In this document: positions 48-50,795 of the stretch, piece by piece
How the letters are laid out: every line of letters starts with the position of its first letter
Numbering within the stretch: the first letter of the stretch is position 1
IMG/VR virus record: IMGVR_UViG_3300041411_000178
Span: 1 to 64,000 of that record
Strand: one strand, 5' to 3'
DNA length: 64,000 nucleotides
The notes under the pieces: generated by a model
Database searches by the model: none
What the model was told of the DNA's origin: nothing
Seen by the model: the letters and a program-made list of their open reading frames with translations, nothing else
Program-made: the position numbers and the translations under genes

Positions 48-68
48 TGATAAATACCTGGTTTGTGT

Positions 69-106
69 AAAGAAAAAAGCGGAAGTGGGTGTGACCCCAC
101 CTCCGT
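69..106 (-). terminator. Intrinsic terminator after the tail lysin gene
   Basis: Imperfect GC stem GCGGAAGTGGG/CCCACCTCCGT, followed on the minus strand by a U-rich tract. Confidence 0.65.
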
Positions 107-110
107 ACAA

Positions 111-3100
111 TCAGATGGTGACAGCAGGCGAAGCAGGCTTCGAGTTGCTTTCCATCGATTTCAACAGTCCAGCAATTTGTTGCAACAGCTGGTTGGTCGT
201 ATCCTGCTTACCAGTACCCTCACCAACAACAGTAGTGAGTTTCTCCATCAAGCCACCTGGATCAGCCGGAGCAGGCTGCTGAGCCGTAGCTTGTTGTTTA
301 GGCACAGGTTTGCCGTACCCTTCTGGCAGTGGCTGCTTACTACCTTGAGGAGTAGACCCAGGAGCAGCAACAGGACCATTAGGGTTCTCGGTAGAACCAC
401 CCTGACCTGGCAATGGCAGCGAGGTGTACGGACCAGGGATCGCTCCCCCACCTGCTCCAGGAGCAACTTGATTACCCCCAGGTGCAGGAGCGTTGCTTTT
501 CATTGCTGGCGTTGGAACGGTCGTTGTATCTGGCGGAGTGGAAGGCATCTGACCCGGATCATACGCTTGATCTTTCGCAGTAACAGTCCCACCCGCTGTT
601 GTGTCTTGACCGGCTGGTTGTGCAGCACCAGCAGCTTGCGCAAACTTGTCAGCCGCTTCCTTCGACTTAAAGCCTACGTGAACATGACCACCCGTAGCAC
701 CGGCCGAAGCCTTAGCGTACTCGTTAAGCAGCAGGAAGTCATTTGGACCCATGTTAGCAGTCCGCAGGATGCCCGCTACAATGCTCATGGCCTGACCTGC
801 ACCAGTTGCACCGTTGGTCAAGGTGAAGTCCAACGCCAAGCCGAGAGCATGCTTAGAGTTAGGCTTCTTGTTCTTGTGGAACGCATCGTTCAATGCAGAG
901 AAGTAGCGGAAGTTCGGTACCTGACTCTGGATCAGTTGGCACAGACGGATAATACCAGGGTGAGCGTCACCGCCCGCAATGGCCTCTCCTGACTTAAGAC
1001 GCAAGCCACTCGAGTTAATTCCCGTACCGCCACCGACCAGAGAGCCTGGTTCGCTAGGAGCGCCGTTACCATAGTTCCCGCTGTAATCTGCACCGCCACC
1101 GCCTGGAGCCATGAGGCTTGGAGGTGTGCTGTAAGCCCCTGCGTTGCGAGAGCCACCACCTGGAGCTGCACCGATCTGCGGCGTGTTGCCTGTACCGATC
1201 GTAGGTGCTGGGTTGCTTCCCCCACCCCCGTACATCGAACCCGCACCTTGAGAAGGCGCTTGGTTCGTACCTTGAGCAGCCGCGTCGTCAGCCTTAAGCT
1301 GTCCGCTTTGCAACTGTTGCAGATAAGAGGTGTAGAGTTGGAACCGCTTAGGCATGCCCGGAAGTTCGTTACCACCATTCAAGCCAGTGGCTGCACGACC
1401 GAAGTTACCGTCCTGGGTGATGCTTTGCAGAAGCTTACTGTTCTTGTAGAAGTTGACCGCGATAGCCGCCATGACGTTTGGATCGTTCGACGCCAGCTCT
1501 GGATTGTTAACCAGGTCAATACCCAGTTGTTGTCCAATGCGAGCGTACTGTGCCCGACCCGTCAGTTGTACCAAGCCACGACCACGATACTTCCACCCAT
1601 CTCCTGGTGCAATGTTACCCAGTGTCTGACCCTTACCGCCGCCGTAAACGGTGTTAGCGATAGCTACAGGACCCGCAGCAACAAGTGCACGCGCCTGCGC
1701 CAGACTGGTAACCTCGCGGAACGTCTTGAGGAGATTCTCAGGAGTGGTATACCGCATGTTTTCGACAGTACGACCAAAGCCCTCTGTTTCGTAGTTGGTG
1801 AGTGCCAACATCTCAGCAATAGCACGAGGGTCAGTGAAGCCTTGTTTCAACATCTCGCGAATGATGAGTTGCTCTGCCAACTGCTTAGGAACTTTAACAC
1901 CGTTATCCTGACCATCGGCCGCCTGTACACCGCTCAAGTCCAAGTGACTGGTATCGCTGTCACCGGTAAGCGGTTGGTAGCCGTAGGAATTACCCGGGGT
2001 CTGATAAGCGCCGCCCAGGTTGTAGGTGTTACCAGTGCCTGAACCGCGACTGGTGTTCGTACCGTACTGCCCACCCAAGCCAACGTCACGACTATTTCTA
2101 GCCTTGCTCACGTCATCGACGTTTGCGCGTTTCGTTGTAAAGTCACCGCCCGTCTTGTGAGGGGAGATAGCCTTAGCCCAGGACTGGGTGTTCGTTTTAC
2201 CGGCTTCCTTTTCCGGGTCTTTCAGTTTAGCCGTTGTACTGGCTTCACCAAGCACGTCCAACATCCTGTCAACACGGTCTGGTTTACCCGGCGATACTGC
2301 GTCTTTGAACGGTGCGGCCCTGACATTCCAGATCGGTACAATCAACCCAGCGCCTGGTTCCACCTTGGTCTCTACCAGCGCCTTGGCGATCTCATAACGC
2401 GCGGTTACCGACAGGGATCTCCACACCACACCCGGATTACCACGACGGTAGTTCTGGATAAGGTTGAAGTAGTTCAGCAACGTTGGCATAAAGCGGTCTT
2501 TAAACCACCGGCACCAGTTATCTGCGTCACCCTTGTCAAGACGGAAGGCCTCTTTGAAGATGCCGAACATGTCACCAACCTGACCTTTGAACTGAGCACC
2601 CCCATCTGCAATAACGATGAGAGACTCGCAGTAGCGTTCCAGTTTCAGAACGGCTTCCACACGCCAGGTCAAGTCTTGATCGTTACCGTAGCACGCCAGA
2701 CGGATACCCGTGAGCATGTCCACTGGACGATTGTCAGGCAGCAAGTCTTTGATGAACACTTCACCAACTACTTTGGAGACCTTGTAGCCACCATTCAACT
2801 GGGCCAGCTGAGTATCGATCTCGTTCAGGCGGTCCTGTGCTTTGATAACGGCTTGCAACTTATCGTTGCTATCAAAGAACCCGCGAGGCTGTGCCAACAC
2901 AGCTTGCAGAGCGGCCTGCTCCTTCTTCATCGCCTCAACACCTTGCGGTGTCTTGATCGCTTCAGCATCGGCAGACGTATCTGTTTTACGGTCGATGTAC
3001 TTCTTCAGCTCTTCCAGTAAGTTGTTGCAACGTACCACGGTGGTCTTTTCACCCAGCAACGGGGTATCCGGATCGATCTTAGCAACGATCGAGTAGGGAA

Positions 3101-6100
3101 ACGGCATCACCGAACCGAGGGTCTGGTGAACCTGTTTGGCGACCTTGTATACGTCTTGACTGACAGCATCGTCGTAGTCCTTTAACGACTTCAGCTTAAC
3201 CACATCCAGACAGGCCATGTAGGTCAGGTACACCGGTTTGAAACGACCGTTGAACCAACTGAAGATGCTGCCAAGTTGTTGCTTGTCTTTCGGGTCAGTG
3301 ATGAACGCTTGCAGGATCTCTTGTAGTGGAGCATCTTTGGAGAACGACGCACGACCGTTACCGATCACCACGTAGTTGGTAAGCTTCTCCTCGATCTGCA
3401 AGATCTTCTTGCCCAAGTCGCTGTCAGGATCCGATACACCGTACTGTGTCATCCGGAGGTCGAACTGTTTCCCCGAGCCTCGTTTGACATAACGGTAGAT
3501 CCCGTAACCAATTGCACCTACAGCAACAGCCGCCAGCACATACGGGTTAAGCAACAGCGGAGCCATTGTAGTCCAGGCACCTGCCAACAGCGGTGTAGCC
3601 GCAGTCGCCATGGCACCCAACCCAATGTCCACACCTGCTGCCGCAGCAACCCCAGTAGCCATTTGGTAACCACCAATTACAGTGGTGGCAGTGGTGGCAA
3701 TATCTCCGATCTGGTTCAGCGCGCCGCCTTCGTCAATGAAGCCTGTGTTAACCAGCGCATCAACGCCCAAGCCCACTGCCAGACCAGCACCCACCTTCAT
3801 GCCACCTTTTGCAACGCGCCCACGAGGAGCCTTGCGATCACGGAGCTGTTTTGCGCGCTCTGCTTTCGTACGCTTCTTCCCGCGCAGATGGTCAAAGGTA
3901 TCAACACCCGCACCCGTCAGACTGCCTGTGCTAACGAGGGTGTAGATACCCTTCGCAATTGCCGCAATCCCTGTGGCCATAAACGGAAGCACTTTAATAC
4001 CGATGTTGGCAAAGGTACCGAGTGTCTTGAAACTGTTCCACAGCGTGCCCGTGAAGAACTTAGTAAGACCGAAGATCCCACCAGCGATAGCACCCAGACC
4101 GTCTTTCAACAGACCGAAGATACCCTGGCTTTCTTTCTTCTCCTTCTTACCACCGCCACCAAAGAAGCCCATACCCTGAGACATCTTAATCAAGGCATCC
4201 TGAGCGTCTTCGGCTTTCTTCTCCTTAGCCTTTTCCAACTTGTCGGCACGGGAGTTAAGACGGTTGTTCTCTTCGGGCTGCTCACCCAATTGCTTACGGA
4301 TACGTGCTTTGATTTGCTCGGCAACATTCCCGAAGCTGGCGTCCTTAGGCTTGGCATCTTCCGCCTCCCGGCGTTCCAATTCTTCAGGCGATACTTGAGC
4401 CTGTTGAGCACCCTTTGGAATCTCCAGCTTTTCCTGAGGTGCCGATGGTGCAGAGGCTGTGGTTTTCAACTTAACTTTCAGCTTAGGAGGTTTAACGCTC
4501 GTTACCGGAACGTTGACGTTCTCATCCCCCACCGGTGTATCCACTGTCGCGCCTGGCATCTCCAGTGCGTAACCCCAGTGCTTCAGCAGCAAGTGGTAGA
4601 TACGGTCGACCGAGTTAACGATCGGGCTGTAGTCAGCCTTGAAGGCCTTTACAGTGGCATCCTTGGCCTTACCGAATGCAGGACCCGCTTTCTCCCGGGC
4701 TTTGTTGAACAGGTCGAGACCCCATTCTCCCAGTTTCTTGCTAGCAGCACCCAGCTTGTTAACGCTCACACCCATCGAGGTACGCAGACCACGATCGTAC
4801 TCTTCCTGGGTAATGATTATGTCACCGTTCTTGTCGTAGACCGGTCCGTCGATCTCATGCCAGCCTGTCAGCTGAACCGCCTCACCACCCTCACCACGTT
4901 TCCAATACTCACCGGCAGCAAAACGCTTACCTACGAGCACAGGTGATTTCTCACCCTCCTTGTAAACGTCCATCTGGTGGAAGCGATTAACGATACGGTC
5001 TTTCAGGGCCACAGCACGACCGAATGGATCAACCCACTTGAACGCCCGCATAGCAAAGTCACGGATCTTGCTCAAACCGCTGAGCAATACTTCCTTGTTC
5101 TCCTTGGTAAACAGTTTACCGGCCAGACGACGTGCACCAATAATGGTGTCGTTGGTCTTGTCCTTAACGCTACCAGTGATCTGCTTCCACGACGTAATGA
5201 GGAATCCTTTCGTTGCGTCGTAGTAGTTACGGTTGGCCAGTTTGTTCGCTTCCAGGATCGGGGTATCAGAACCCTCCTCATAAAGGTCTTCACTGTCCAG
5301 AGCAGCACGGGTTTTCGACATGCTGTGAATCTTGCCGTAAGCCAAGGCTACCGCAGCACCACCACCCAGCAATGCAGCCGCTTTAGGGTCGTGGATTGCA
5401 TACGCTGCCAAACCACCCAACAGACCACCCAATACCAAAGGCTGAGCATCCAGGAGTTTATCAACCCCTTTGTTGAACATGTCCTTCAGGTTGGTTGCTT
5501 TCAGACGTTCAATGATCGAACGCTTACCGGCACTGATGTCGTGCTTGTCTTCGGAGGTAGGTGGTTTACCACTACCCGGTTGGTTGTGAAGGATACGAGT
5601 CAGGAGGTCATTACGCTCCACACCCATTTCCACCAGACGCTTCACCTGTTCATTTAGGCTGGTCATGCCAGCGTTCAACGGATCGAGGTTCAACATCTGA
5701 GCCAGCGGGTTGCCTGGACCTCCCATGTTGTTAATGGCTGTCTTCAAATCGCCCATGCTTGCCAGGGATTCAGTCAGCTTGTCCATTCCTTGAACCTTAA
5801 CACCCTCTGGAGACTCCTCTCCGGGGATTACAGGCGTTCTGTTACCGAAGGTCGGCACAGTGTAAGGGAAGCCACCAAAGCTCCCTGGACGAGTCGGTAG
5901 GGGGGTACGATCCGGGATCTTCGTATTACGGCGATTGGGGTCGGCAATGTACGAAGCGATAGCATCCTTGATCATGTCCATGTTGATGTCATCACGGTTA
6001 TACTCATCCGTGACAATCAACCCCGATTCTTTCAAGGCATCGTAACTACCGGTGCCCTTATGAATGTCCAACTGTGCAGCAATGTCAGGAACCAGGTTAC

Positions 6101-8108
6101 CCAGGCTCTTAACGGCATCGGCCACACCCACAACGTTCTTACGGGCCTTTTCAGTTGGCAGGTAGCCCGCCATCTTGATGCGGTTGGCATCAGAACCCGT
6201 TTCGAAGTCAGCGATGTGTTTGTCGGTAATGTCGAACGCAGCTTTCATGGCACGACGGATTTCAGCAGCAACCTTCGGACTAACGCCCGCATGCTCATCC
6301 AGCTTCAAGAAGTTCCAAGGCGTGAACGCCTCTTCCTTGTCGCTACCCATGATCAGTTCCATCGACAGCGCTTTCTTGGCCTCAGGGCTGAGTGCACCTA
6401 ACCCCAGTTGGTCAATCGTGTCTGTGATGTTGTTGGAGGACTGAGCCACCGAACTGAAGCTGTTGCGGTCGAGAACCTTGTTAACAACGTTGTTAACCTT
6501 TTGGTCGTGAGTAATGAAGCGGGCCTTTACGTAGTCATACGACATCGGCTTGAGCTTGTCTTCACCCGTCCGGATCTTCTCCAGCGACAGGTGGATCTGG
6601 CTCATCCACTGTGGAATGATTTCGTTCAGCGTACGGTCACTGCGACGGCTCCAGTGAGTTTGTTCGTAGCTGTCAGCCAAAGTACGATTGGTCAGCGAGT
6701 AACGACTACCACTGTTAGACCACGAGTTCTCGTACAACGACCCCAGACCCTTGTTAGCAGTCTTCTTCAGGGTGTTGAGAACTTCCCACTCCAACTTCGG
6801 CGTAGGCTTAGCACCCGGTGGCAACGAAGCCAGGTACTCGTCGTAGTCTTCATGACCGTTAACGTCCATACCACCGACGTAGTGACGCTGCATGGCGTTA
6901 ACCAGCCCAGCTGCGTTACCCGTGGTGTAGGTTGCGACGTTACCCAGATCCTCCATTCGCTTATAGGCGTCTTCTGCCCACTTCGCTTGTTTCGGATAGT
7001 TCTTCTTGAACTTGGCGAGGTACTCACGTGCTCTGCCCGACTTCATAATGCGTGGCAGTTGGCTAATAAACAAACCAGCCGCAGCATTACCTGCGATGTC
7101 ACCGAGGTTAAGGGTCATGCCCTCAGTCATCTCAGTGGCCATGCGCAGAGAGCCTACAACGTCGCCTACAGCCCCGATCGTGTCACTCCGTGCATCCTTA
7201 CCGAACTTGTCGTTAATGAACTCAGAGATGCCACCGAACTTGCTCTTGACGCTGCTGAAGAACTGCGAACGGATTTCCTTACGGATAGCCTGGCTGTGAG
7301 AGGTCTTCTCATAGTCCGACATCTTCGAGAACTCACGAATACTCTTCAGTTCACTGATGACGCGGTGTTGAGCCGCTTCCTGGAACTTGTAGTACTTCGC
7401 GTTCGTCAGGTACATCCGTGTCATGACGTTCAGCTGCATGGCATCGCTACGGGCTTGTACCCGACGCTGATGATCCAACAGCTGTTCCATGAGTTGGTTG
7501 TTGCGTACCAGGGAACGGTTCAGCGTGTTCATGCTGCCGATGGTACGACCACCCACCTCGGCCATCATGTCCATGGTGCGGTCGGCGATGGTCTCCATGG
7601 TGTTGCGTTCTAGGAGGGAGTTAGCCTCGCTAGCTTCCATGGCCATCTTGACCTGATCTTCGCTGACGTCTTCCATTCGAGGGGTGCTATCACCCTCAGA
7701 AAAGTCGGTCTTTTCCCAGTCAGAAAAATCGTGGGAACTGAACTTCATCAGCTGATCGGAGATTTTATTAGGACCCCCTTTACCGAGTTTGGTTCCGGCC
7801 CTTTTTGCGAGGTACTGGAGGTCTTGTACCGTCTGGTAACTATCTCCCTTAATTTCCTCCATTACTTCGCGACGACGCTGGTTTAACTGAGCGACGTTAC
7901 TGAATGCGCCAAGCCAAGTATTGGGCAAAACCATTTTGAGGGTGTTAACCCTGGCATCGGTGTCACCTACGGTCTTGCCGACGACACCCGAAAGGAAGCC
8001 GGTAGCAAAGCTTCTGATAAAGCCCGCTTTGGGTTTATCAAAATCGTCGTCAAAGTCTAGATCGCCACCAAAGGGATCGTCGTCCCATGAATCGAAATCA
8101 TCGGCCAT
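111..8108 (-). CDS. Giant tail-associated peptidoglycan hydrolase / tape-measure-like protein (phiKZ gp181-like) with GH19 and peptidase M15-like domains
   Basis: 2665 aa; Gly/Ala hydrophobic segments; GH19 motif GDGWKYRGRGLVQLTGR; SKHALGLALDF...HVH zinc motif; divergent from vRNAP beta' as in phiKZ-like phages. Confidence 0.85.
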   Translation of the reverse strand: MADDFDSWDDDPFGGDLDFDDDFDKPKAGFIRSFATGFLSGVVGKTVGDTDARVNTLKMVLPNTWLGAFSNVAQLNQRRREVMEEIKGDSYQTVQDLQYLAKRAGTKLGKGGPNKISDQLMKFSSHDFSDWEKTDFSEGDSTPRMEDVSEDQVKMAMEASEANSLLERNTMETIADRTMDMMAEVGGRTIGSMNTLNRSLVRNNQLMEQLLDHQRRVQARSDAMQLNVMTRMYLTNAKYYKFQEAAQHRVISELKSIREFSKMSDYEKTSHSQAIRKEIRSQFFSSVKSKFGGISEFINDKFGKDARSDTIGAVGDVVGSLRMATEMTEGMTLNLGDIAGNAAAGLFISQLPRIMKSGRAREYLAKFKKNYPKQAKWAEDAYKRMEDLGNVATYTTGNAAGLVNAMQRHYVGGMDVNGHEDYDEYLASLPPGAKPTPKLEWEVLNTLKKTANKGLGSLYENSWSNSGSRYSLTNRTLADSYEQTHWSRRSDRTLNEIIPQWMSQIHLSLEKIRTGEDKLKPMSYDYVKARFITHDQKVNNVVNKVLDRNSFSSVAQSSNNITDTIDQLGLGALSPEAKKALSMELIMGSDKEEAFTPWNFLKLDEHAGVSPKVAAEIRRAMKAAFDITDKHIADFETGSDANRIKMAGYLPTEKARKNVVGVADAVKSLGNLVPDIAAQLDIHKGTGSYDALKESGLIVTDEYNRDDINMDMIKDAIASYIADPNRRNTKIPDRTPLPTRPGSFGGFPYTVPTFGNRTPVIPGEESPEGVKVQGMDKLTESLASMGDLKTAINNMGGPGNPLAQMLNLDPLNAGMTSLNEQVKRLVEMGVERNDLLTRILHNQPGSGKPPTSEDKHDISAGKRSIIERLKATNLKDMFNKGVDKLLDAQPLVLGGLLGGLAAYAIHDPKAAALLGGGAAVALAYGKIHSMSKTRAALDSEDLYEEGSDTPILEANKLANRNYYDATKGFLITSWKQITGSVKDKTNDTIIGARRLAGKLFTKENKEVLLSGLSKIRDFAMRAFKWVDPFGRAVALKDRIVNRFHQMDVYKEGEKSPVLVGKRFAAGEYWKRGEGGEAVQLTGWHEIDGPVYDKNGDIIITQEEYDRGLRTSMGVSVNKLGAASKKLGEWGLDLFNKAREKAGPAFGKAKDATVKAFKADYSPIVNSVDRIYHLLLKHWGYALEMPGATVDTPVGDENVNVPVTSVKPPKLKVKLKTTASAPSAPQEKLEIPKGAQQAQVSPEELERREAEDAKPKDASFGNVAEQIKARIRKQLGEQPEENNRLNSRADKLEKAKEKKAEDAQDALIKMSQGMGFFGGGGKKEKKESQGIFGLLKDGLGAIAGGIFGLTKFFTGTLWNSFKTLGTFANIGIKVLPFMATGIAAIAKGIYTLVSTGSLTGAGVDTFDHLRGKKRTKAERAKQLRDRKAPRGRVAKGGMKVGAGLAVGLGVDALVNTGFIDEGGALNQIGDIATTATTVIGGYQMATGVAAAAGVDIGLGAMATAATPLLAGAWTTMAPLLLNPYVLAAVAVGAIGYGIYRYVKRGSGKQFDLRMTQYGVSDPDSDLGKKILQIEEKLTNYVVIGNGRASFSKDAPLQEILQAFITDPKDKQQLGSIFSWFNGRFKPVYLTYMACLDVVKLKSLKDYDDAVSQDVYKVAKQVHQTLGSVMPFPYSIVAKIDPDTPLLGEKTTVVRCNNLLEELKKYIDRKTDTSADAEAIKTPQGVEAMKKEQAALQAVLAQPRGFFDSNDKLQAVIKAQDRLNEIDTQLAQLNGGYKVSKVVGEVFIKDLLPDNRPVDMLTGIRLACYGNDQDLTWRVEAVLKLERYCESLIVIADGGAQFKGQVGDMFGIFKEAFRLDKGDADNWCRWFKDRFMPTLLNYFNLIQNYRRGNPGVVWRSLSVTARYEIAKALVETKVEPGAGLIVPIWNVRAAPFKDAVSPGKPDRVDRMLDVLGEASTTAKLKDPEKEAGKTNTQSWAKAISPHKTGGDFTTKRANVDDVSKARNSRDVGLGGQYGTNTSRGSGTGNTYNLGGAYQTPGNSYGYQPLTGDSDTSHLDLSGVQAADGQDNGVKVPKQLAEQLIIREMLKQGFTDPRAIAEMLALTNYETEGFGRTVENMRYTTPENLLKTFREVTSLAQARALVAAGPVAIANTVYGGGKGQTLGNIAPGDGWKYRGRGLVQLTGRAQYARIGQQLGIDLVNNPELASNDPNVMAAIAVNFYKNSKLLQSITQDGNFGRAATGLNGGNELPGMPKRFQLYTSYLQQLQSGQLKADDAAAQGTNQAPSQGAGSMYGGGGSNPAPTIGTGNTPQIGAAPGGGSRNAGAYSTPPSLMAPGGGGADYSGNYGNGAPSEPGSLVGGGTGINSSGLRLKSGEAIAGGDAHPGIIRLCQLIQSQVPNFRYFSALNDAFHKNKKPNSKHALGLALDFTLTNGATGAGQAMSIVAGILRTANMGPNDFLLLNEYAKASAGATGGHVHVGFKSKEAADKFAQAAGAAQPAGQDTTAGGTVTAKDQAYDPGQMPSTPPDTTTVPTPAMKSNAPAPGGNQVAPGAGGGAIPGPYTSLPLPGQGGSTENPNGPVAAPGSTPQGSKQPLPEGYGKPVPKQQATAQQPAPADPGGLMEKLTTVVGEGTGKQDTTNQLLQQIAGLLKSMESNSKPASPAVTI

Positions 8109-8135
8109 CTTTAACTCCCAAGGGATAATTTTTAA

Positions 8136-9752
8136 ATGAAACCCACAAACCTTACGTTACTGGACTTTAACAAAATCGGTCCACCTGTGTTTCAACCGGT
8201 GACGTCCACTGACGCGTTTGAAGGCATGACCCAAAACCTCAACGAGGAAGGTCTTTATTCTCCTGAAATCTTCGGCAAGTTGGGTAGCAAAGAGCGCGAC
8301 GAGACCGAAGCGTTTATCGATACCAAATTAGAAATATTCAACCCAACGTACTTTAAAGCGATGATTCAAACAAAGTCGCTTTACCTCGGAATTATCAAAG
8401 GCACGGAATACGCCGTCTGGGACCCGCAGGCCAAAGATTTCATAAAATCCAACCTCCTCGACGGGGAGACTGGTTTCAGTTTCTTTGTGAGTCACTTCAA
8501 AGAATTGCAACCCACCCTGTCCGAGAGTTACAAGCGTAAACAAAAGGTTGAACTGGTTCAGCGCTTCAAGCCGATTGCATTGGCGAATAAGGTTCTGGTT
8601 CCGCCCGCCGGTCTTCGGGACATTGAGTTCCAACCGGATGGTTCTTCAGTAGAACCTGAGATCACCGACCTATACCGCAAGCTGTTGTTCCGCACGCGGG
8701 TAGTGTCACTGGGTAGCAAGGAAGATGGTGACAACCCACTGTATGATACGGTGCGTTGGGGACTTCAGAGTTCCTACAACGATATCGATCAGTACATCTT
8801 CGATCTGATGGACGGGAAGTCGGGTCTGTTCCAACGTCGGGTTTCGACTCGGGGTGTGGTGTCGGGTACTCGTAACGTTATTACCGCCCGTAAGGTCTCC
8901 AGAGAACACTTGCACAAAGGGAACGGGGTTAACCCGAACTCGGTGGACATGGGTCTCTATCAAGCGTTGCTGAACTTTCAGTACGTTTGTATTCACGCAT
9001 TGCTCACTAAGTACCTGGGGGATATTTTCCAGCCAGGCTCCCAAAACGTCAAGTTGGTTAACACCAAGACTCTGGAGTACGAATATGTCGAGGTCGCAGC
9101 AGCTGTTGTCGAAAAGTGGTCAACGGCCACAGGCATCTCCAAACTCTTCAACGGTTTCGGAAACGCTCGACTCCGCTCCAAACCCATCATCCTTTCTGGG
9201 CACTATCTGGCGCTGGTGTACGACGACGGTCATGATGTTTGTGTCCTGAGTGACATCAACGATCTGCCTGCCGGGAAAGATCGTAAACTGGTGACACCTA
9301 TCACCTACATGCAGCTCTATTACCTGTCCTGCCACAAAGTCATTGGCGAACAGGTTTCCCAGCAGACGCGTTACCCGGTAATCGGTATCGGTTCCATCTT
9401 CCCTGCCAAAGTTAACCTCTTGAGCATTGAAGGGGCCAAGCCGCGAACCATCCGTAACTCCGAGTGGGATGTGATCGAAGAGTGCATGCGCTATCCGCAC
9501 AACCTTGAAAAGCCTGATTACTTTGACGCCATGTCGGTAGACCCAAGTCGTGAAGCCGGTCTCGATTCCGACCACGACGGTGACATGCTCAACAGTAACA
9601 GTGTCTGTGCCGAAGACAGTAAGGCTCAGGTTAACGATCTATTCGGTAAACGTGAGTACTACATCAGCGGCAGCAATCGGTTCCTTTATGACCCTGTGAA
9701 CGAACCTATCTTGTTTATGCTCAAAGCCGCCACCAGCGGTATGGAGAAATAA
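8136..9752 (+). CDS. Virion RNA polymerase beta' subunit, N-terminal/catalytic part (phiKZ gp180-like)
   Basis: EGLYSPEIFG motif, GTRNVIT, catalytic DxDGD (DSDHDGD). Confidence 0.9.
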   Translation: MKPTNLTLLDFNKIGPPVFQPVTSTDAFEGMTQNLNEEGLYSPEIFGKLGSKERDETEAFIDTKLEIFNPTYFKAMIQTKSLYLGIIKGTEYAVWDPQAKDFIKSNLLDGETGFSFFVSHFKELQPTLSESYKRKQKVELVQRFKPIALANKVLVPPAGLRDIEFQPDGSSVEPEITDLYRKLLFRTRVVSLGSKEDGDNPLYDTVRWGLQSSYNDIDQYIFDLMDGKSGLFQRRVSTRGVVSGTRNVITARKVSREHLHKGNGVNPNSVDMGLYQALLNFQYVCIHALLTKYLGDIFQPGSQNVKLVNTKTLEYEYVEVAAAVVEKWSTATGISKLFNGFGNARLRSKPIILSGHYLALVYDDGHDVCVLSDINDLPAGKDRKLVTPITYMQLYYLSCHKVIGEQVSQQTRYPVIGIGSIFPAKVNLLSIEGAKPRTIRNSEWDVIEECMRYPHNLEKPDYFDAMSVDPSREAGLDSDHDGDMLNSNSVCAEDSKAQVNDLFGKREYYISGSNRFLYDPVNEPILFMLKAATSGMEK

Positions 9753-9756
9753 AGGT

Positions 9757-12700
9757 ATGAATATCCCATCGGCGAACACGCTGAGTCCCCTAGACGCAGT
9801 AACGGGGGATGAAGCACTCTACCCCCAGTTCTACCGCGCCTTTGTACAGCGTAAGCGTCAAGAGTTGATCGCCCCTGTGTTCATCGGGATTGGCGAGATT
9901 ATCTTGCCACGTGGGTCGCTGGTTCACTTCTTCCCAAACAACCCACAAGAGATCGGTCCTTCGATTTCTGAAGCCTTTATCAGCAACTACCCGGATGAGG
10001 TGTTTGTTGAGTTCCCGGCGAAGTACACCCCGGTGATTGGCAACGGTCGCGCAGTACAGATCGAACCCCGCAAGATCATCACGGGTTATCGTGGGTCGCA
10101 CTACAAGTACAACTGGACCAAGGACATCAACACGGTCTACAACAAGGACAAGGTACTGGTTGTTAAGAGCTACGGCCTCGCCGACATGCTCTGGCATCCA
10201 CGTGCTTCGCTGTTTATCAATTTCGAGAAGTATTACAACCACTTCAACCTGTTGATGGATGGCGTTAACGAAGAAGCTGAGCGCAGCAAACGCCGTAAGC
10301 AGTTCTACCGTATTGACCTGCCGCTGCACATGCCGTCGTTTACTGACCTGATGATCGACTACGACCATTACGTCGAAAGCTTCCGTGACGGTAAGCCGTT
10401 GCCGAGCAACAAGACCGTTCGGACTACCAAGCAGGAGAACTCCTACTGGTTGATGGACTGGATGGCGTTCCTGTTTGGTGACAACGAATTCAGTCTGCTG
10501 AATAAGCTGTCTGATAAAGCGATCGAAGATTTCCACCTGATCTTTGTTTTCAACAGTCGTGCACTGGTGATTCACCTGGGTACGCTGAAAGGGTGGTTGG
10601 ATGCAGAGATGGATCCTAAAGCAAAAGCCAAGGAAGGCAGCGCGCCAAAGAGCAACCGTGATAAACACGGAAAGCGTTTGAACGCATCCAAGCGTGTTTA
10701 CCTGGCCTTGCTGAACCTTACCCGAGGTGGTGTCTCGGAAGAGGAAGTAGTAAAAGAGGAAAAATCCGATGGAAGAGGAGAAGAAACAGCGTCGGCTGGG
10801 GGCGTGGTTGCAGAAGCGCCGGGAGCTGAGAAAGGGAAAGGCAAAGTATCCGGTGGATCCGGAGAAGGAACGCTTCCTCGCAAAAATGACAGTAAGCGAA
10901 CTGTTGATCATCCTGATCCTCTCCGTGATGCTTTCGGTGGCGGTCAAAAAGCTGACGACGGAGTTCATGAAGGGGCCGGACAAGAGGGAGACGGAACAAA
11001 TTCTGAAAGCCTTGAAGAGTGGACATCACACGTAGACGACCGTCTGCTGGAACAAGACAAGGTGGTTGCAGATACTTCGATCAAGAAGGATCCGTTTCCC
11101 AAGTTTGAAAGTGGCGTAGGGGCTGCTCTGGAAGAAGTAGCGCGTGAGGGTAAGCTGTCTGTTTCCACTCAGCAGTTCTTCATGCGTAAAGCGACTCAGG
11201 TGTATCACATCGAAATGGAAAACGGCCAGAGTCTGGCTGAATACATGGAGATCAAACCAGAGGAGCTGAAGACGCTTACCAGCGACGCAAAGATCGAGGG
11301 TAACTTCCCCACGATTCTCGACCAATCGATGCTCCAGAGCCGTGCCAAGGTCTTGAAGCAGGGTTATGTGGACAAGTTCCTGCATAAGGACATTGCCCGC
11401 ATGGCAGTCGGTATTCAAAACGCCGGCTTTGCGTTGAACGACTACAAGCATGAGCAGATCCACGGTGTAGAAGGTTCCTACGACGTTGTGACGATGCAAG
11501 TCCACCACGTCGATGGCGAACAGTCGACTCACCAGGTTCGCTTCCCTATGGTGAACAAGGACAGTTCCTTCACTGTTGACGGGGTTAAGTCCCACCTGCA
11601 ACTGCAACGCATGGAACTGCCGATCCGCAAGATCGACGCCAGTACTGTGTTGTTGACCAGTCACTACGACCGCCAGCTCATGGTGACCCGTAGCAAGAAG
11701 GTTGTGGACGATCTGGGTGTGTGGCTGAAGAAACAGATCCTGCTGCGTGCTATGGCTGACAAGGACATCACGCTCAGTCGTGGTAATGGTCGTAACCGTG
11801 ACTATACTGGTCCGCGGATCTACACCATCTTGGCCAGTCGTTTCCAGTGGATCAATGTCGGCGGCTACATGCTGGACTTCCGCATCGAGAAGCTGCTGGA
11901 AGAGTATCCAGAGTTCAAGAAGTTCACCAAGCCGGACATGTTCCTGGTGGGCGTCAAGGACAAGAAGCCGATCACGATCGACAGCTACGGCAACCTCTAC
12001 CTGGACGGTGTTGAGTTTAACACCTTTGAAGGGTTGATGGGGATCAACTTCAGCAAAGCACCTAACGAACATGCCGTGATCAACATCAGCGGCTTTCAGT
12101 TTCCTCTGGGTGTTGTGCTGTGTTACTACTTCGGGATTGACGAACTGCTGAAGATCGTTAAGGCTACCACTCGAAGTGTCCCTATGGGTACCCGGCCTAA
12201 GTTGGCGGATGATGAATACGCCATTCAGTTCAACGACGAGTATTTGATCTTTAACCGTCGTGAGAAACTGTCCACCTTGATCTTCGGTGGGATGCCTAAG
12301 TTGAACAACATCAGTAACTTCAGCCGAAGTGACCTGAACAACAAAGGTATCTGGGGTCCGCTGATGGGAGACCCTAAGGTTCGTCCTTCTCAGTTCCTGG
12401 AGATGAACCTGCTGTACAAAATGTTTATCGACCCGGTCACTAAAGACCAGTTGAAACGCATGGGTTACAGCGAGTCCTTCCATTACCTGCTGATCGATGC
12501 TGCGAAGCTGCTGGAAACCGACTACACCCCTCACGAGGTGGAATTGGAAGAACAGCGGATCGTTGGCTATGAGCGTTTCGCAGGGCACTTCTACAAGGTC
12601 ATGGTAGGGGCATCGCGTCAGTTCTTCAACAAAGGTAAGGGTCGTAAGCAGAAGCTGGAGATCAACCCTGAAGCTGTGATCATGAACATCCTCAAGGACA

Positions 12701-14127
12701 CCTCGGTTAACCGGGTAGAGGAAGTGGGCCCAATTCACCAGTGTAAGGATCAGGAGGAACTGACCTTTGGTGGCACGGGTGGTCGCAGTGAGATCACGGT
12801 AGTTAAGCGCGCACGTGTGCAGCTGAAAAGCTATCGTGGCAAGATCTCTGAGGCGAACAAGGATAGCGGCAAGGTAGGTTTCGTAACTTACTTGACGTCT
12901 GATCCTTTGATCCTCGACTACCGCGGCAACATCGACACCAAGAGTAAACCATCTGCTACCTCGCTGTATTCGGTAACAGGTAACCTCGCATTCGGTATGA
13001 ACAAGGACGATACCAAGCGTGGCATGTTTACCTCGACTCAGGCGTCTCAAGCGGTCAGTGCTGAAAACTACACCATGCCAATCACCCGCACAGGCTATGA
13101 CAACATCATTGCTCAGCGGACCTCTGAACTCTACAGCAAGGTTGCTAAAGAGGCCGGTAAGGTAACGGCTGTTGAAGACGACCATATGGAAATCACCTAT
13201 AACGACGGCAACACTGAAAAGTATCCGTTGGGTTTGGTTATTGGTGAAGCCAGTGGTGAGTACCATCGTCACACCCGCGTTACCGATATGAAAGTCGGCG
13301 ACAAGTTTACGAAGGGTGAGATCCTGGGTTGGGACAAGCAGTGGTTTGCGCGTGACCCATTCTGCCCAGGACAAGTGGTTTGGAAAAACGGTCGTCAAGT
13401 TCGTATTGCGCTGGTAGAAGACCAAGACACCTACGAAGACTCCATCGCGGTTTCGAAAGAGATCATGGAGGAATCGATTACCCCGTTCCTGACGAAGAAC
13501 ACCTTCGCCGTGGATGTGGATAAAGTTGTGACCTTCCGGGTTAAACTAGGTGACCAAATCGACTACGACGCGATTTTATGCGAAATTGAAGAGAGCCACC
13601 TGGCGGGGGCTGGAGAGGCGAATAGCCAAGTCGGGGATATCAACCGTCTGGGGATCAAGCAGATCCGCTCCAAGTACCACGGCCAGGTCGTGAAGATCGA
13701 GGTGATGTACAACTCACCCGCGGAAAAGATGTCGGACAGTGTGCGTAAACTGGTTGCTGCTTCGGACAAAGAACGCAAGCGCATGTCTTCGATTGATGGC
13801 AGTGTTCCAACAGGTAGCGTGAGTAACAACCTCAACGTGAGTAAGCCTGTATTGTCACCAGGAAAAGTATTGTTTACTGTCTACGTCGAATCCATGGATG
13901 GTTCTACCACCTCGGACAAATACGTAATTGCCAACCAGATGAAAGGTACTGTCAACGGTGTAATGAAGAAGCCGTTGATGACTCAAGACGGTCGTGTGGT
14001 AGACGTCAAGTGTAGCTTTAAAGGCGGCTTTAACCGCATGGTACTGAGCTTACGGGATCGACTGGGTACAAGTGAACTGTCGGTTGGGGTTACCAAACAG
14101 GCTATTGCCATTTACAGAGGTAAGTAA
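9757..14127 (+). CDS. Virion RNA polymerase beta subunit (phiKZ gp178-like)
   Basis: 1456 aa; TFGGTGGRS, SGKVG, DDTKRGMF, TYEDSI, DKYVIANQMKG beta-like motifs; adjacent to beta'. Confidence 0.9.
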   Translation: MNIPSANTLSPLDAVTGDEALYPQFYRAFVQRKRQELIAPVFIGIGEIILPRGSLVHFFPNNPQEIGPSISEAFISNYPDEVFVEFPAKYTPVIGNGRAVQIEPRKIITGYRGSHYKYNWTKDINTVYNKDKVLVVKSYGLADMLWHPRASLFINFEKYYNHFNLLMDGVNEEAERSKRRKQFYRIDLPLHMPSFTDLMIDYDHYVESFRDGKPLPSNKTVRTTKQENSYWLMDWMAFLFGDNEFSLLNKLSDKAIEDFHLIFVFNSRALVIHLGTLKGWLDAEMDPKAKAKEGSAPKSNRDKHGKRLNASKRVYLALLNLTRGGVSEEEVVKEEKSDGRGEETASAGGVVAEAPGAEKGKGKVSGGSGEGTLPRKNDSKRTVDHPDPLRDAFGGGQKADDGVHEGAGQEGDGTNSESLEEWTSHVDDRLLEQDKVVADTSIKKDPFPKFESGVGAALEEVAREGKLSVSTQQFFMRKATQVYHIEMENGQSLAEYMEIKPEELKTLTSDAKIEGNFPTILDQSMLQSRAKVLKQGYVDKFLHKDIARMAVGIQNAGFALNDYKHEQIHGVEGSYDVVTMQVHHVDGEQSTHQVRFPMVNKDSSFTVDGVKSHLQLQRMELPIRKIDASTVLLTSHYDRQLMVTRSKKVVDDLGVWLKKQILLRAMADKDITLSRGNGRNRDYTGPRIYTILASRFQWINVGGYMLDFRIEKLLEEYPEFKKFTKPDMFLVGVKDKKPITIDSYGNLYLDGVEFNTFEGLMGINFSKAPNEHAVINISGFQFPLGVVLCYYFGIDELLKIVKATTRSVPMGTRPKLADDEYAIQFNDEYLIFNRREKLSTLIFGGMPKLNNISNFSRSDLNNKGIWGPLMGDPKVRPSQFLEMNLLYKMFIDPVTKDQLKRMGYSESFHYLLIDAAKLLETDYTPHEVELEEQRIVGYERFAGHFYKVMVGASRQFFNKGKGRKQKLEINPEAVIMNILKDTSVNRVEEVGPIHQCKDQEELTFGGTGGRSEITVVKRARVQLKSYRGKISEANKDSGKVGFVTYLTSDPLILDYRGNIDTKSKPSATSLYSVTGNLAFGMNKDDTKRGMFTSTQASQAVSAENYTMPITRTGYDNIIAQRTSELYSKVAKEAGKVTAVEDDHMEITYNDGNTEKYPLGLVIGEASGEYHRHTRVTDMKVGDKFTKGEILGWDKQWFARDPFCPGQVVWKNGRQVRIALVEDQDTYEDSIAVSKEIMEESITPFLTKNTFAVDVDKVVTFRVKLGDQIDYDAILCEIEESHLAGAGEANSQVGDINRLGIKQIRSKYHGQVVKIEVMYNSPAEKMSDSVRKLVAASDKERKRMSSIDGSVPTGSVSNNLNVSKPVLSPGKVLFTVYVESMDGSTTSDKYVIANQMKGTVNGVMKKPLMTQDGRVVDVKCSFKGGFNRMVLSLRDRLGTSELSVGVTKQAIAIYRGK
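10769..11035 (+). CDS. Putative overprinted small membrane protein in the +1 frame inside vRNAP beta (holin/antiholin candidate)
   Basis: 88 aa; GAGGA SD 8 nt before ATG; basic N-terminus, one hydrophobic helix LLIILILSVMLSVAV, charged C-terminus; coincides with a low-complexity linker of the host gene. Confidence 0.5.
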   Translation: MEEEKKQRRLGAWLQKRRELRKGKAKYPVDPEKERFLAKMTVSELLIILILSVMLSVAVKKLTTEFMKGPDKRETEQILKALKSGHHT

Positions 14128-16777: not shown

Positions 16778-17503
16778 ATGGACGTCGGCAATCTCAAGCA
16801 CGACCCCAAGATTGCAGACCGCCTGTTGATTGAAATGGAAGATGGGTCCGTTATTGCTAAACGCGATTTCGAGATTCATCTTCCTAAGCGTTTCGTTGAC
16901 AGCGGCATGGCAGAGGTTGGGGAAACAGTCACAACGCCAGTGGTGCTTGGGTTGGTGATCCCAGGGGATAGTTACGCTCCCCTGATGTCATTGATGGACA
17001 TTACCCTCGTTCCGTTGAGCATTCGTGAAGTTGCAATCAAGGGCACCCAGTACCTGGTGTTGGAGTTTACCAAAGGTGACACGGTAATCGACAACATCAA
17101 CGTGCTGCAAGAGCCCAATCACCCGTACGCGTATTACATGGAGTTCCTCTACTACGCCAAGCGTCCTTGGTATGTCACTGAAAACGCCTTGTCGTCGATG
17201 TTTGACTTGGCAGCTTCGCAGAGTGGCGACCCGGTAGGTAGCAGTCCTCAGGTGATGCGCGTCTACATGTCATTAATGTTCCGTGATCCAGACAACCTGG
17301 AGAAGCCGTACCGGTACAGTAAGGCGATGTTGGAAGGACGACCTCCAGTCATTGTAGGTCTTAATAACAGTGGGCTCCTGATCGACGGTACGTTCCCGAA
17401 AATCATGGGCGGTTACCAACGTGACAACACGGTAGCGGCTATTGTGAACCCTGATGACCGTGTTACTGACCTGGAGAAGATTATTAAAGGGGTCCCAGTA
17501 TGA
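16778..17503 (+). CDS. Conserved jumbo-phage protein (phiKZ gp176-like by position)
   Basis: 241 aa, directly upstream of the protease with ATGA overlap. Confidence 0.6.
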   Translation: MDVGNLKHDPKIADRLLIEMEDGSVIAKRDFEIHLPKRFVDSGMAEVGETVTTPVVLGLVIPGDSYAPLMSLMDITLVPLSIREVAIKGTQYLVLEFTKGDTVIDNINVLQEPNHPYAYYMEFLYYAKRPWYVTENALSSMFDLAASQSGDPVGSSPQVMRVYMSLMFRDPDNLEKPYRYSKAMLEGRPPVIVGLNNSGLLIDGTFPKIMGGYQRDNTVAAIVNPDDRVTDLEKIIKGVPV

Positions 17504-50734: not shown

Positions 50735-50745
50735 GAATGATCTGT

Positions 50746-50795
50746 CACTACATTCCTCATCAATAGGGGAGTGTAGTGGCCCATTTTCTTTTTTG
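50746..50795 (+). terminator. Intrinsic terminator
   Basis: CACTACATTCCTC...GGGGAGTGTAGTG plus T-rich tract. Confidence 0.65.

What the first reader, a model, noticed from the sequence alone, without database searches (positions are those of the whole stretch)
650..1880. Tail lysin carries two different cell-wall hydrolase domains (GH19 plus M15-like zinc peptidase)
Seen: GH19 motif RGRGLVQLTGR (about 1555-1600), then a Gly/Ser/Pro linker and SKHALGLALD...HVH (about 670-860), the H-x6-D...HxH signature of M15/LAS peptidases, then a P/Q/A-rich disordered tail. Known: phiKZ gp181 ends in a single lytic transglycosylase domain. Inference: this virion cuts both glycan and peptide stems during entry, and the C-terminal cassette is swappable.
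Basis: partly seen in the sequence, partly recalled or inferred. Interest (0 to 1): 0.6.

Follow-up and report, generated by a model that had tools for sequence, protein, structure and literature searches.

The report
Jumbo-phage tail protein, two wall-cutting domains
The giant tail protein of this EL-like jumbo phage ends in a family-19 glycosidase followed by a previously unlabelled zinc-peptidase-type domain, so the virion probably cuts both the sugar chains and the peptides of the host cell wall on entry; the design is known in other phages and the same pair is present, unannotated, in phage EL.

Summary
All motifs lie, on the minus strand, in one 2665-aa ORF (window 111-8108).

**GH19 domain (aa 2066-2265).** It passes Pfam's cut-off and matches solved phage GH19 endolysins at E 3e-19. 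Both catalytic-type Glu positions are invariant in 44 homologues.

**Second domain (aa 2363-2495), after a Gly/Ser/Pro linker.** It reaches no Pfam M15 threshold: 13 bits against a cut-off of 25. An AlphaFold model (core pLDDT above 90) has the LAS (Hedgehog/DD-peptidase) fold. Best matches are:
- VldE, the "MT3" tape-measure-type L,D-endopeptidase, Z 8.8
- Sonic hedgehog N-domain, Z 8.4
- *Streptomyces albus* Zn DD-peptidase, Ply500, T5 and RB49 endolysins, VanX and MepA, Z 5-6.3

The residues D-x2-H, S-x-H-x2-G-x-A-x-D, E and H-x-H are at least 96% conserved in 193 diverse copies.

**Distribution.** The domain family has at least 1342 clusters at 50% identity, mostly in tape-measure and tail-lysin proteins, and no Pfam model covers it. 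Among isolated phages it occurs only in EL-like phages and in Erwinia phages Joad and RisingSun, where it is not annotated.

**Modularity.** Homologous giant proteins of other phiKZ-like phages lack the domain. Elsewhere it follows SLT or a tail lysozyme, so the catalytic end is modular.

Enzyme activity, zinc binding and bond specificity remain untested. I rate this a new member of a known kind, of moderate interest.

The parts
111..8108 (-). Whole gene: 2665-aa giant virion tail protein, homologue of phage EL gp183 and phiKZ gp181 (PHROG 3201)
   Evidence: ORF list and translation. PHROG 3201 matches along the whole length at E 1e-128 to 4e-158. EL gp183 is the closest isolate.
3954..4013 (-). 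Hydrophobic segment, aa 1366-1385 (possible membrane-inserting stretch)
   Evidence: Kyte-Doolittle 19-residue window of 1.5 or more. The role is inferred.
3498..3569 (-). Hydrophobic segment, aa 1514-1537
   Evidence: Kyte-Doolittle maximum 1.83. The role is inferred.
1314..1913 (-). GH19 (family-19 glycoside hydrolase, phage-lysin type) domain, aa 2066-2265
   Evidence: Pfam PF00182 at 33.3 bits, above the 25.5 cut-off. PHROG 181 endolysin at 1e-45. PDB 8p8e at 3e-19, 9ms6 at 1e-18, 4ok7 at 1e-16. Forms a conservation block.
1788..1790 (-). Glu2107, first catalytic-type Glu of GH19
   Evidence: Aligned to the conserved Glu of solved GH19 lysins. Invariant in 44 of 44 homologues.
1761..1763 (-). 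Glu2116, second catalytic-type Glu (E-x8-E)
   Evidence: Aligned 'vEN'. Invariant in 44 of 44.
1554..1586 (-). GH19 signature RGRGLVQLTGR, aa 2175-2185
   Evidence: R2175 and R2177 are invariant.
1023..1313 (-). Gly/Ala/Ser/Pro-rich linker, aa 2266-2362
   Evidence: Composition. Low conservation with gaps. pLDDT below 50 in its modelled part.
624..1022 (-). LAS-fold (Hedgehog/DD-peptidase-like) putative zinc peptidase domain, aa 2363-2495
   Evidence: AlphaFold2 model with mean pLDDT 82 and core above 90. VIA-align Z 8.8 to VldE, 8.4 to ShhN, 6.3 to 1lbu, and 5-6 to Ply500, T5, RB49, LysB4, VanX, MepA and DacB. Atlas and BFVD neighbours are Hedgehog and Peptidase_M15_3/M15A.
876..887 (-). Asp2408-x2-His2411, conserved pre-motif (aligns with D-x2-H of Sonic hedgehog N-domain)
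   Evidence: D present in 192 of 193 copies, H in 190 of 193. Alignment to Shh.
828..857 (-). SKHALGLALD: His2420-x6-Asp2427, predicted zinc ligands
   Evidence: H in 192 of 193, G2423 in 193 of 193, D in 193 of 193. Aligned to the Shh S-x-H-x2-G-x-A-x-D motif.
720..722 (-). Glu2463, conserved acidic residue (candidate general base)
   Evidence: Present in 192 of 193 copies. The role is inferred by analogy with Shh E177 and VanX E181.
678..686 (-). His2475-Val-His2477, the HxH motif of LAS enzymes
   Evidence: H2475 in 192 of 193. H2477 in 185 of 193, with Asp in the other 8. Lies at the start of strand 137-141 of the model.
249..623 (-). Pro/Gly/Ala/Thr/Gln-rich, poorly conserved tail, aa 2496-2620
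   Evidence: Composition. Conservation 0.23-0.36 with gaps.
114..248 (-). C-terminal 45 residues of ordinary composition, aa 2621-2665 (possible anchoring helix)
   Evidence: Composition. Phage EL shows a similar pattern at its C-terminus. Conservation is weak, and the role is speculative.

Best explanation
The gene at 111-8108 (minus strand) encodes the giant virion tail protein of an EL-like (phiKZ-related) jumbo phage. It is the counterpart of phiKZ gp181 and EL gp183 and probably acts as the tape-measure or ejected tail protein. Near its C-terminus it carries two independent muralytic modules joined by a flexible Gly/Ser/Pro linker.

1. A GH19 glycosidase cuts the glycan strands. Its candidate catalytic residues are Glu2107 and Glu2116.
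2. A LAS-fold zinc metallopeptidase follows. The predicted zinc ligands are His2420, Asp2427 and His2477. His2475, Glu2463 and His2411 are candidate catalytic residues. It would cleave the peptide stems or cross-links of peptidoglycan.

On tail contraction the protein is expelled into the periplasm. There the two enzymes together open the murein layer for the tail tube, and the hydrophobic middle segments may help to cross the inner membrane.

**Shown here:** domain identities, fold, residue conservation, distribution and modularity.

**Inferred:** zinc binding, catalysis, the bond cleaved, the location in the virion and the timing of action.
For: **One ORF with two conserved blocks.** The blocks are separated by a variable linker.

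**GH19.**
- Pfam match above the cut-off.
- Solved phage GH19 lysins at E 3e-19 to 1e-16, with the E-x8-E glutamates aligned and invariant in homologues.

**Second domain.**
- Confident model, core pLDDT above 90.
- In an all-against-representatives structural search, 12 of the 17 best rows are LAS enzymes or Hedgehog N-domains. These include VldE at Z 8.8, ShhN at 8.4, Hh at 8.0, 1lbu at 6.3, Ply500 at 5.9, RB49 at 5.8, LysB4 at 5.5, T5 at 5.4, VanX at 5.1, MepA at 5.0 and DacB at 5.0.
- Foldseek, the ESM Atlas and BFVD point the same way.
- 20 of 46 family members give a sub-threshold Peptidase_M15_4 match.
- A broad profile's best PDB matches are Sonic hedgehog at E 0.09 and VldE at 0.17. 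They align exactly on D-x2-H...S-x-H-x2-G-x-A-x-D.
- The putative metal and catalytic residues are 96-100% conserved in 193 copies drawn from 50%-identity clusters.

**Carriers of the domain.** They are mostly tape measure proteins, tail lysozymes and lytic tail proteins. VldE's domain is the MT3 motif of the TM4 tape measure protein and is a proven L,D-endopeptidase with H, D, H zinc ligands and an HxH motif (PMC11667670; PMC1796659).

**Genome context.** The window belongs to a complete 224-kb phiKZ/EL-like genome with virion RNA polymerase subunits next to the gene, as in EL.
Against: - No curated M15 or other peptidase family reaches its threshold.
- Sequence searches of the PDB give nothing significant.
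- The structural Z-scores of 5-9 lie in the range where the tool warns that a match can reflect only a common arrangement. The case rests on many LAS entries clustering at the top together with motif conservation.
- Hedgehog N-domains keep the same zinc site while their peptidase role is debated, so conservation of the site does not prove catalysis.
- The tape-measure role is not shown for this protein. There is no PF10145 hit, and PHROG 3201 is labelled 'tail fiber protein'.
Confidence: 0.78

Rival explanations
1. The second domain has the LAS fold and may bind zinc, but it is not a peptidoglycan peptidase. It would act as a binding or structural module, for example holding peptide stems for the GH19 domain or docking in the baseplate, as a Hedgehog-like pseudo-enzyme.
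For: The nearest sequence and fold neighbours include Hedgehog N-domains, whose zinc site is conserved without an agreed enzymatic role. No curated peptidase family threshold is met.
Against: The full set of LAS catalytic-type residues is kept in 96-100% of 193 diverse copies, including the first His of HxH and a Glu. The best structural match is a proven L,D-endopeptidase from the tape-measure MT3 class. The domain travels with glycosidases in tail lysins.
Confidence: 0.12
2. The domain is an active metallopeptidase whose substrate is protein, not murein. It would process the giant protein itself, another virion protein or a host envelope protein.
For: Giant tail and tape-measure proteins are often proteolytically processed (general knowledge). 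The domain sits between two disordered, cleavable stretches.
Against: Every characterised bacterial or phage LAS enzyme among the matches acts on peptidoglycan peptides or D-Ala-D-Ala. The phage encodes its own head maturation protease. The consistent pairing with glycosidases argues for murein.
Confidence: 0.05
3. The H-x6-D...H-x-H pattern is a chance motif in a low-complexity C-terminal region, and no folded domain is there.
For: The surrounding sequence is Gly/Pro/Ala-rich. The Pfam match covers only 19 residues.
Against: There is a conserved 133-residue block with 20 invariant columns in 46 proteins. At least 1342 representative clusters match at E 1e-3 or better. The alpha/beta model is confident.
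Confidence: 0.01

Closest known systems
Pseudomonas phage EL gp183 (YP_418216, 2543 aa); also the homologues in Erwinia phages Joad and RisingSun
   Same: It is an orthologous giant tail protein with the same order: GH19, linker, LAS-like domain, disordered tail. It shares 68% identity over the catalytic end and 59% over the LAS domain. The H-x6-D and H-x-H motifs are kept, and the neighbouring divergent virion RNA polymerase gene is the same.
   Different: This protein is 122 residues longer, with a different linker and tail. No nucleotide-level match was found. Public records label the EL protein only as 'lysozyme domain', 'tail fiber' or 'endolysin'. The second domain is not annotated there.
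phiKZ gp181, structural peptidoglycan hydrolase (Briers et al. 2008, as cited in PMC5380687)
   Same: It is a homologous giant virion protein: the body (aa 1540-2000) is about 22% identical to phiKZ-group phages. It also carries a C-terminal muralytic domain used at entry.
   Different: gp181 has a single glycosidase of lysozyme or transglycosylase type. It has no GH19 and no LAS-like domain: no phiKZ-group record matched the LAS domain.
MT3 motif of the mycobacteriophage TM4 tape measure protein, and VldE of Streptococcus pneumoniae (PDB 9flh)
   Same: This is the best structural match (Z 8.8, 90 residues, rmsd 3.0). It is a LAS fold with H-x6-D and HxH, it sits inside a phage tape-measure-type protein, and it has proven peptidoglycan L,D-endopeptidase activity.
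   Different: There is no significant sequence relation: TM4 gp17 scores 2.2 bits, motif only, and VldE has E 0.17. VldE has an Arg and a zinc-zipper loop that were not identified here. Its hosts are Gram-positive or mycobacterial.
Hedgehog N-terminal signalling domain and M15A zinc DD-peptidases (Streptomyces albus 1lbu; Pfam Peptidase_M15_3)
   Same: The fold is the same (Z 8.4, 8.0 and 6.3). These are the best, though sub-threshold, sequence matches. They share D-x2-H...S-x-H-x2-G-x-A-x-D and the E...H-x-H arrangement. Atlas neighbours carry HH_signal and Peptidase_M15_3.
   Different: All E-values are 0.09 or worse. There is a longer insert between the conserved Glu and HxH. The biological context differs: signalling or carboxypeptidase against a phage tail lysin.
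Dual-activity virion-associated lysins and tape measure proteins (e.g. staphylococcal HydH5; T5 Pb2; TMPs with SLT plus peptidase)
   Same: The logic is the same: a tail protein delivers a glycosidase and a peptidase to the wall at infection (reviews PMC5380687; my own knowledge for HydH5 and Pb2).
   Different: The catalytic families differ (CHAP, LYZ2 or M23 against GH19 and the LAS family found here). Most described cases are from Gram-positive hosts or siphophages.

Membership tests
Glycoside hydrolase family 19 (Pfam PF00182), phage-lysin subgroup | Score above Pfam's curated gathering threshold | tested here: met
   33.3 bits against a cut-off of 25.5, E 5.6e-08. All 44 EL-like homologues also carry a PF00182 annotation.
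Glycoside hydrolase family 19 (Pfam PF00182), phage-lysin subgroup | Two catalytic glutamates (general acid and base) in the N-terminal part of the domain | tested here: met
   E2107 and E2116 (E-x8-E) align with the conserved Glu pair of solved GH19 lysins 8p8e and 9ms6. Both are invariant in 44 of 44 homologues. Their catalytic role is taken from knowledge of GH19.
Glycoside hydrolase family 19 (Pfam PF00182), phage-lysin subgroup | Full-length similarity to solved GH19 catalytic domains | tested here: met
   8p8e at 3.4e-19 over query 41-197, 4ok7 at 1.1e-16, 7r6s at 2e-17.
Glycoside hydrolase family 19 (Pfam PF00182), phage-lysin subgroup | Muramidase or chitinase activity | not testable with these tools
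   Needs an enzyme assay.
Peptidase family M15 (Pfam Peptidase_M15_2/_3/_4, VanY) | Score above a curated Pfam or NCBIfam threshold | tested here: not met
   The best match is Peptidase_M15_4 at 13.1-13.8 bits against a cut-off of 25, over 19 residues. NCBIfam gave nothing. 20 of 46 relatives give the same sub-threshold match.
LAS superfamily (MEROPS clan MD; Hedgehog/DD-peptidase fold) | H-x(3-6)-D and H-x-H (or E/D-x2-H) zinc motifs in this order | tested here: met
   H2420-x6-D2427 and H2475-x-H2477. They are conserved in 192, 193, 192 and 185 of 193 copies respectively.
LAS superfamily (MEROPS clan MD; Hedgehog/DD-peptidase fold) | Central antiparallel sheet packed against helices, superposable on known LAS structures | tested here: met
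   The model has pLDDT 82. Z is 8.8 to 5.0 for VldE, ShhN, Hh, 1lbu, Ply500, RB49, LysB4, T5, VanX, MepA and DacB, which occupy most of the top 17 rows. The Atlas and BFVD searches agree. The Z values are moderate.
LAS superfamily (MEROPS clan MD; Hedgehog/DD-peptidase fold) | The three ligands converge on one zinc ion | not tested
Only the placement of the motifs on strands 86-91 and 137-141 is known.
LAS superfamily (MEROPS clan MD; Hedgehog/DD-peptidase fold) | Zinc-dependent cleavage of peptidoglycan peptides | not testable with these tools
   Needs metal analysis and muropeptide LC-MS.
MT3 motif family (TM4 tape measure protein / VldE) | Detectable sequence homology to MT3 | tested here: not met
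   TM4 gp17 scores 2.2 bits, with only the H-x6-D motif aligned. VldE has E 0.17. The fold match is nevertheless the best in the PDB.
Phage tail length tape measure protein | Match to a TMP family model (PF10145, PF06791, PF20155, TMP PHROGs) | tested here: not met
   P0001 has no TMP Pfam hit, and PHROG 3201 is labelled 'tail fiber protein'. Other carriers of the same LAS domain do match TMP models.
Phage tail length tape measure protein | Very long protein with internal hydrophobic segments and a C-terminal muralytic end | tested here: inconclusive
   The protein is 2665 aa with hydrophobic segments at 1366-1385 and 1514-1537. This is compatible with a TMP but not specific to one.

The most novel reading that the evidence does not exclude
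The second domain defines a large, uncurated branch of the LAS superfamily, with at least 1342 clusters at 50% identity. It is almost confined to phage tape-measure and tail-lysin proteins. By sequence it lies closer to the Hedgehog N-terminal domain than to any curated M15 family. It could have a bond specificity not yet described for virion lysins of Gram-negative hosts, and it could be informative about the prokaryotic or viral relatives of the Hedgehog zinc site.
Probability: 0.25. Interest if true: 0.55.

Novelty: new member of a known kind. Interest (0 to 1): 0.36.

Why it matters
**Correction of annotation.** The giant tail protein of EL-like jumbo phages is currently labelled 'tail fiber', 'endolysin' or 'lysozyme domain'. 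These results give it a second, probably peptidolytic, active site.

**Biology of entry.** phiKZ-type phages appear to differ in how they breach murein: one glycosidase in phiKZ, a glycosidase plus a peptidase in EL, Joad, RisingSun and this phage.

**Domain curation.** The results point to a widespread tape-measure-associated zinc-peptidase-like domain that has no Pfam model and could be curated.

**Practical use.** Two compact, linker-separated catalytic modules active on Gram-negative murein are candidates for engineered lysins.

Tried and rejected
- Megablast of the region against 50,697 phage records found no match, so the phage is new at the DNA level.
- phmmer of the second domain against PDB sequences found nothing. 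The family profile A1 against PDB gave only chance-level rows.
- NCBIfam gave nothing for the GH19 region, the second domain or the tail.
- A word-index search for free-standing relatives of the second domain (78-247 aa) found none. This search only covers that length range.
- Foldseek against PDB gave no row at E 0.001 or better, although the top rows were already Hedgehog and LD-carboxypeptidases. The exhaustive VIA-align search was needed.
- I tested whether the domain is the same sequence family as the TM4 'MT3' motif. It is not: only the H-x6-D motif aligns.
- Literature searches for EL gp183/EL183 or for a peptidase domain in phiKZ-like tail lysins found no description.
- The 'gp181' and 'tape measure' hits in the phage G paper refer to other genes.
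- Measuring the zinc-site geometry was not possible, because model coordinates are not exposed.
- The read-mapping tools and the complex-prediction tool were not used, since nothing in the claim depends on them.
Full report
**1. What is at the coordinates**

The finding lies in the 3' part of a single open reading frame on the minus strand, window 111..8108, which encodes 2665 residues (protein P0001).

| Feature | Residues | Window coordinates |
|---|---|---|
| RGRGLVQLTGR | aa 2175-2185 | 1586-1554 |
| SKHALGLALD | aa 2418-2427 | 857-828 |
| HVH | aa 2475-2477 | 686-678 |

Between the two blocks is a stretch of about 100 residues rich in Gly, Ala, Ser and Pro. After the second block comes a stretch of about 125 residues rich in Pro, Gly, Ala, Thr and Gln. 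In an alignment of the last 720 residues of 44 homologues, conservation is high in two blocks (aa 2066-2265 and 2366-2495). It is low, with many gaps, in the linker and in the tail.

**2. The genome and the protein**

The window is the first 64 kb of a 224,004-bp virus record with direct terminal repeats, rated complete. Several neighbours mark it as a phiKZ-like jumbo phage:
- two virion-RNA-polymerase beta-type subunits at 8136-9752 and 9757-14127
- a head maturation protease
- a DUF7193 protein
- a divergent family-B DNA polymerase

There is no nucleotide-level match in 50,697 phage records.

At the protein level the closest isolate is *Pseudomonas* phage EL. The C-terminal 445 residues compared are 68% identical to EL gp183. 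EL gp183 has the same neighbouring, divergently transcribed RNA polymerase gene.

The whole protein matches PHROG 3201 from end to end. The conserved body (aa 1540-2000) has homologues in 181 jumbo-phage records, including the phiKZ group, phiPA3, Ea35-70-like Erwinia phages, Ralstonia RP31 and Goslar. These homologues are annotated inconsistently as tail fiber, endolysin, tape measure, chitinase or peptidoglycan hydrolase. The protein is therefore the counterpart of phiKZ gp181, the structural peptidoglycan hydrolase reviewed in PMC5380687.

**3. First catalytic domain: GH19**

- Pfam Glyco_hydro_19 scores 33.3 bits against a cut-off of 25.5.
- PHROG 181 (endolysin) matches at 1e-45.
- Solved phage GH19 lysins match at 3e-19 (8p8e), 1e-18 (9ms6), 2e-17 (7r6s) and 1e-16 (4ok7) over about 160-190 residues.
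- In those alignments Glu2107 and Glu2116 (E-x8-E) fall on the conserved Glu pair. Both are invariant in 44 of 44 homologues, whereas the neighbouring Glu2109 is not.

**4. Second domain: sequence evidence**

No curated family reaches its threshold. Peptidase_M15_4 gives 13 bits (E 0.09-0.15) over the 19 residues around S-x-H-x2-G-x-A-x-D. NCBIfam and a PDB sequence search give nothing.

The block is nevertheless a real domain. Evidence for this comes from three searches:
- It is found in 46 giant proteins: 44 carry GH19 and two are 2.2-kaa tape measure proteins. There are 20 invariant columns.
- An exhaustive HMM search of 1.84 billion representatives finds 1342 proteins at E 1e-3 or better and 736 at E 1e-10 or better. 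Their lengths run from 217 to 3176 aa, with a median of 878.
- In 193 copies, the key residues are kept as follows.

| Residue | Copies conserved (of 193) |
|---|---|
| D2408 | 192 |
| H2411 | 190 |
| H2420 | 192 |
| G2423 | 193 |
| D2427 | 193 |
| E2463 | 192 |
| H2475 | 192 |
| H2477 | 185 (Asp in the other 8) |

A broad profile (A4, 123 sequences) has as its best PDB matches the Sonic hedgehog N-domain (E 0.09) and VldE (E 0.17). Both are below significance. They align precisely on D-x2-H...S-x-H-x2-G-x-A-x-D, which are the zinc-ligand motifs of those proteins.

**5. Second domain: fold evidence**

AlphaFold2 with the 46-sequence alignment gives mean pLDDT 82, with blocks in the core above 90. 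The element order is helix, strand, helix, strand, helix, strand, strand, helix. The H-x6-D motif leads into strand 86-91 and HxH sits at strand 137-141.

Foldseek against the PDB gave only weak rows, but Hedgehog N-domains and the LD-carboxypeptidases LdcB and DacB already headed the list.

The exhaustive VIA-align search of 48,161 representative chains put LAS-fold proteins at the top.

| Match | Z |
|---|---|
| VldE C-terminal domain (9flh) | 8.8 |
| ShhN | 8.4 and 7.7 |
| Drosophila Hh | 8.0 |
| *Streptomyces albus* Zn DD-peptidase (1lbu) | 6.3 |
| Ply500 | 5.9 |
| RB49 L-Ala-D-Glu peptidase | 5.8 |
| LysB4 | 5.5 |
| T5 L-Ala-D-Glu peptidase | 5.4 |
| VanX | 5.1 |
| MepA | 5.0 |
| DacB | 5.0 |

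Unrelated alpha/beta folds scored about 5. The individual Z values are moderate, and the tool's own note says a Z under 8 can be a common arrangement. The weight of the evidence is that a dozen members of one superfamily crowd the top and that the motif residues coincide.

The ESM Atlas search returns Hedgehog (HH_signal) and Peptidase_M15_3/M15_2 clusters as the nearest named ones. BFVD returns 'Peptidase M15A, C-terminal' proteins, Gordonia phage tape measure proteins, and a 442-aa protein named GH19 at 31% identity.

VldE's catalytic domain is explicitly the 'MT3' motif of the mycobacteriophage TM4 tape measure protein. It is an experimentally proven L,D-endopeptidase with zinc ligands H301, D308 and H375 and an HxH motif (PMC11667670; Piuri and Hatfull, PMC1796659).

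At the sequence level, however, this family is distinct from MT3. TM4 gp17 aligns only over the H-x6-D motif, at 2.2 bits.

**6. Who carries the domain**

Of 45 diverse carriers scanned with Pfam:
- 11 hit tape-measure models (PhageMin_Tail 7, TMP_3 2, TMP_2 1, lambda TMP C-terminal 1)
- 6 hit Phage_lysozyme2
- 1 hit SLT
- no Pfam model covers the domain itself

With PHROGs, most named matches are 'tail length tape measure protein'. Others are 'baseplate hub subunit and tail lysozyme', 'lytic tail protein', 'transglycosylase' and 'endolysin'.

The domain sits at a median 77% of the protein length, with about 118 residues after it. P0046 (2218 aa) has PhageMin_Tail at 150-347, SLT at 1733-1828 and the domain at 1913-2071.

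Among isolated phages the domain occurs only in nine EL-like records and three Joad/RisingSun records. There are weak hits in *Psychrobacter* phage D'Alembert and *Vibrio* phage VH-8. The homologous giant protein exists in 181 records, and many of these carry GH19 without the second domain.

Four arrangements all exist: SLT alone (phiKZ, from the literature), GH19 alone, GH19 with the LAS domain, and SLT with the LAS domain.

**7. Mechanism proposed**

*Shown:* two independent, conserved catalytic-type domains joined by a variable, disordered linker near the C-terminus of a giant virion-type protein.

*Inferred:* the protein lies in the tail, either as a tape-measure-like lumen protein or as part of the puncturing device, as proposed for gp181. 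It is expelled on contraction. In the periplasm, GH19 cuts the glycan strands and the LAS domain cuts the peptide stems or cross-links, which enlarges the hole in the murein. Two strongly hydrophobic segments, aa 1366-1385 and 1514-1537, may take part in crossing the inner membrane, as is proposed for other ejected tape measure proteins.

The bond cleaved cannot be predicted. LAS enzymes include DD- and LD-carboxypeptidases, L-Ala-D-Glu endopeptidases, and DD- and LD-endopeptidases.

**8. Rivals**

- *A zinc-binding but non-catalytic module, Hedgehog-like.* This is possible, at about 0.12, because conservation of a zinc site is not proof of catalysis.
- *A protease acting on proteins.* This is unlikely, at about 0.05.
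- *A chance motif.* This is excluded.

**9. Novelty and verdict**

The precise label should be 'LAS-superfamily (Hedgehog/M15A-like) zinc-peptidase-type domain', because membership of a curated M15 family was tested and not met.

The design, a tail or tape-measure protein carrying a glycosidase plus a LAS peptidase, is a known kind. Examples are TM4 MT3 and the dual-domain virion lysins. The same architecture has been present, unannotated, in phage EL gp183 since its genome was published. I found no paper describing it.

What is new is the annotation itself, together with the recognition that the domain belongs to a large family without a Pfam model. Interest is moderate. Enzyme activity, zinc binding and bond specificity remain to be shown.

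Noticed in passing
window 8109-8135: The tail-lysin gene (start 8108, minus strand) and the first virion RNA polymerase subunit gene (start 8136, plus strand) are divergent with only 27 bp between their start codons. Phage EL gp183/gp184 have the same arrangement. Any promoters for both must overlap the coding ends.
   Followed up: no
window 14130-15050 (+): A 306-aa ORF lies directly after the large vRNAP subunit. It matches PHROG 4928 (2e-60) and, more weakly, 'baseplate hub' (phrog_196) and 'peptidase' (phrog_21656), but no Pfam family. It could be another tail or baseplate enzyme fragment.
   Followed up: partly
window 8136-14127 (+), 17500-18360 (+), 32742-35411 (+), 50655-52934 (+): These are hallmark phiKZ-like genes: two vRNAP beta-type subunits, a head maturation protease, DUF7193 (889 aa, E 4e-267) and a divergent family-B DNA polymerase. 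The record is 224,004 bp with terminal repeats and is rated complete.
   Followed up: partly
window 63-992 (+), 1248-2042 (+), 2157-3020 (+), 3663-4946 (+), 6408-7613 (+): Long ORFs (226-427 aa) lie antisense to the lysin gene. They are most likely by-products of the G+C-rich, low-complexity coding strand rather than genes.
   Followed up: no
protein P0053 (605 aa, metagenomic), residues 165-289 and 464-587: One carrier has two tandem copies of the LAS-like domain.
   Followed up: no
BFVD A0A6J5SXI3 (442 aa) and protein P0048 (322 aa): A 442-aa uncultured-phage protein named GH19 matches the LAS model at 31% identity, so the GH19-plus-LAS pair also exists outside giant proteins. P0048 starts with the domain at residues 18-147 and may be a split or truncated ORF of a giant protein.
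   Followed up: no
window 114-248 (-), aa 2621-2665: After the disordered tail, the last 45 residues or so have ordinary composition and a helix-like pattern (…LLQQIAGLLKSMES…). EL gp183 has a similar ending (…ILAEIYKVLGRMAE…). This may be an anchoring element, but identity across homologues is low.
   Followed up: partly
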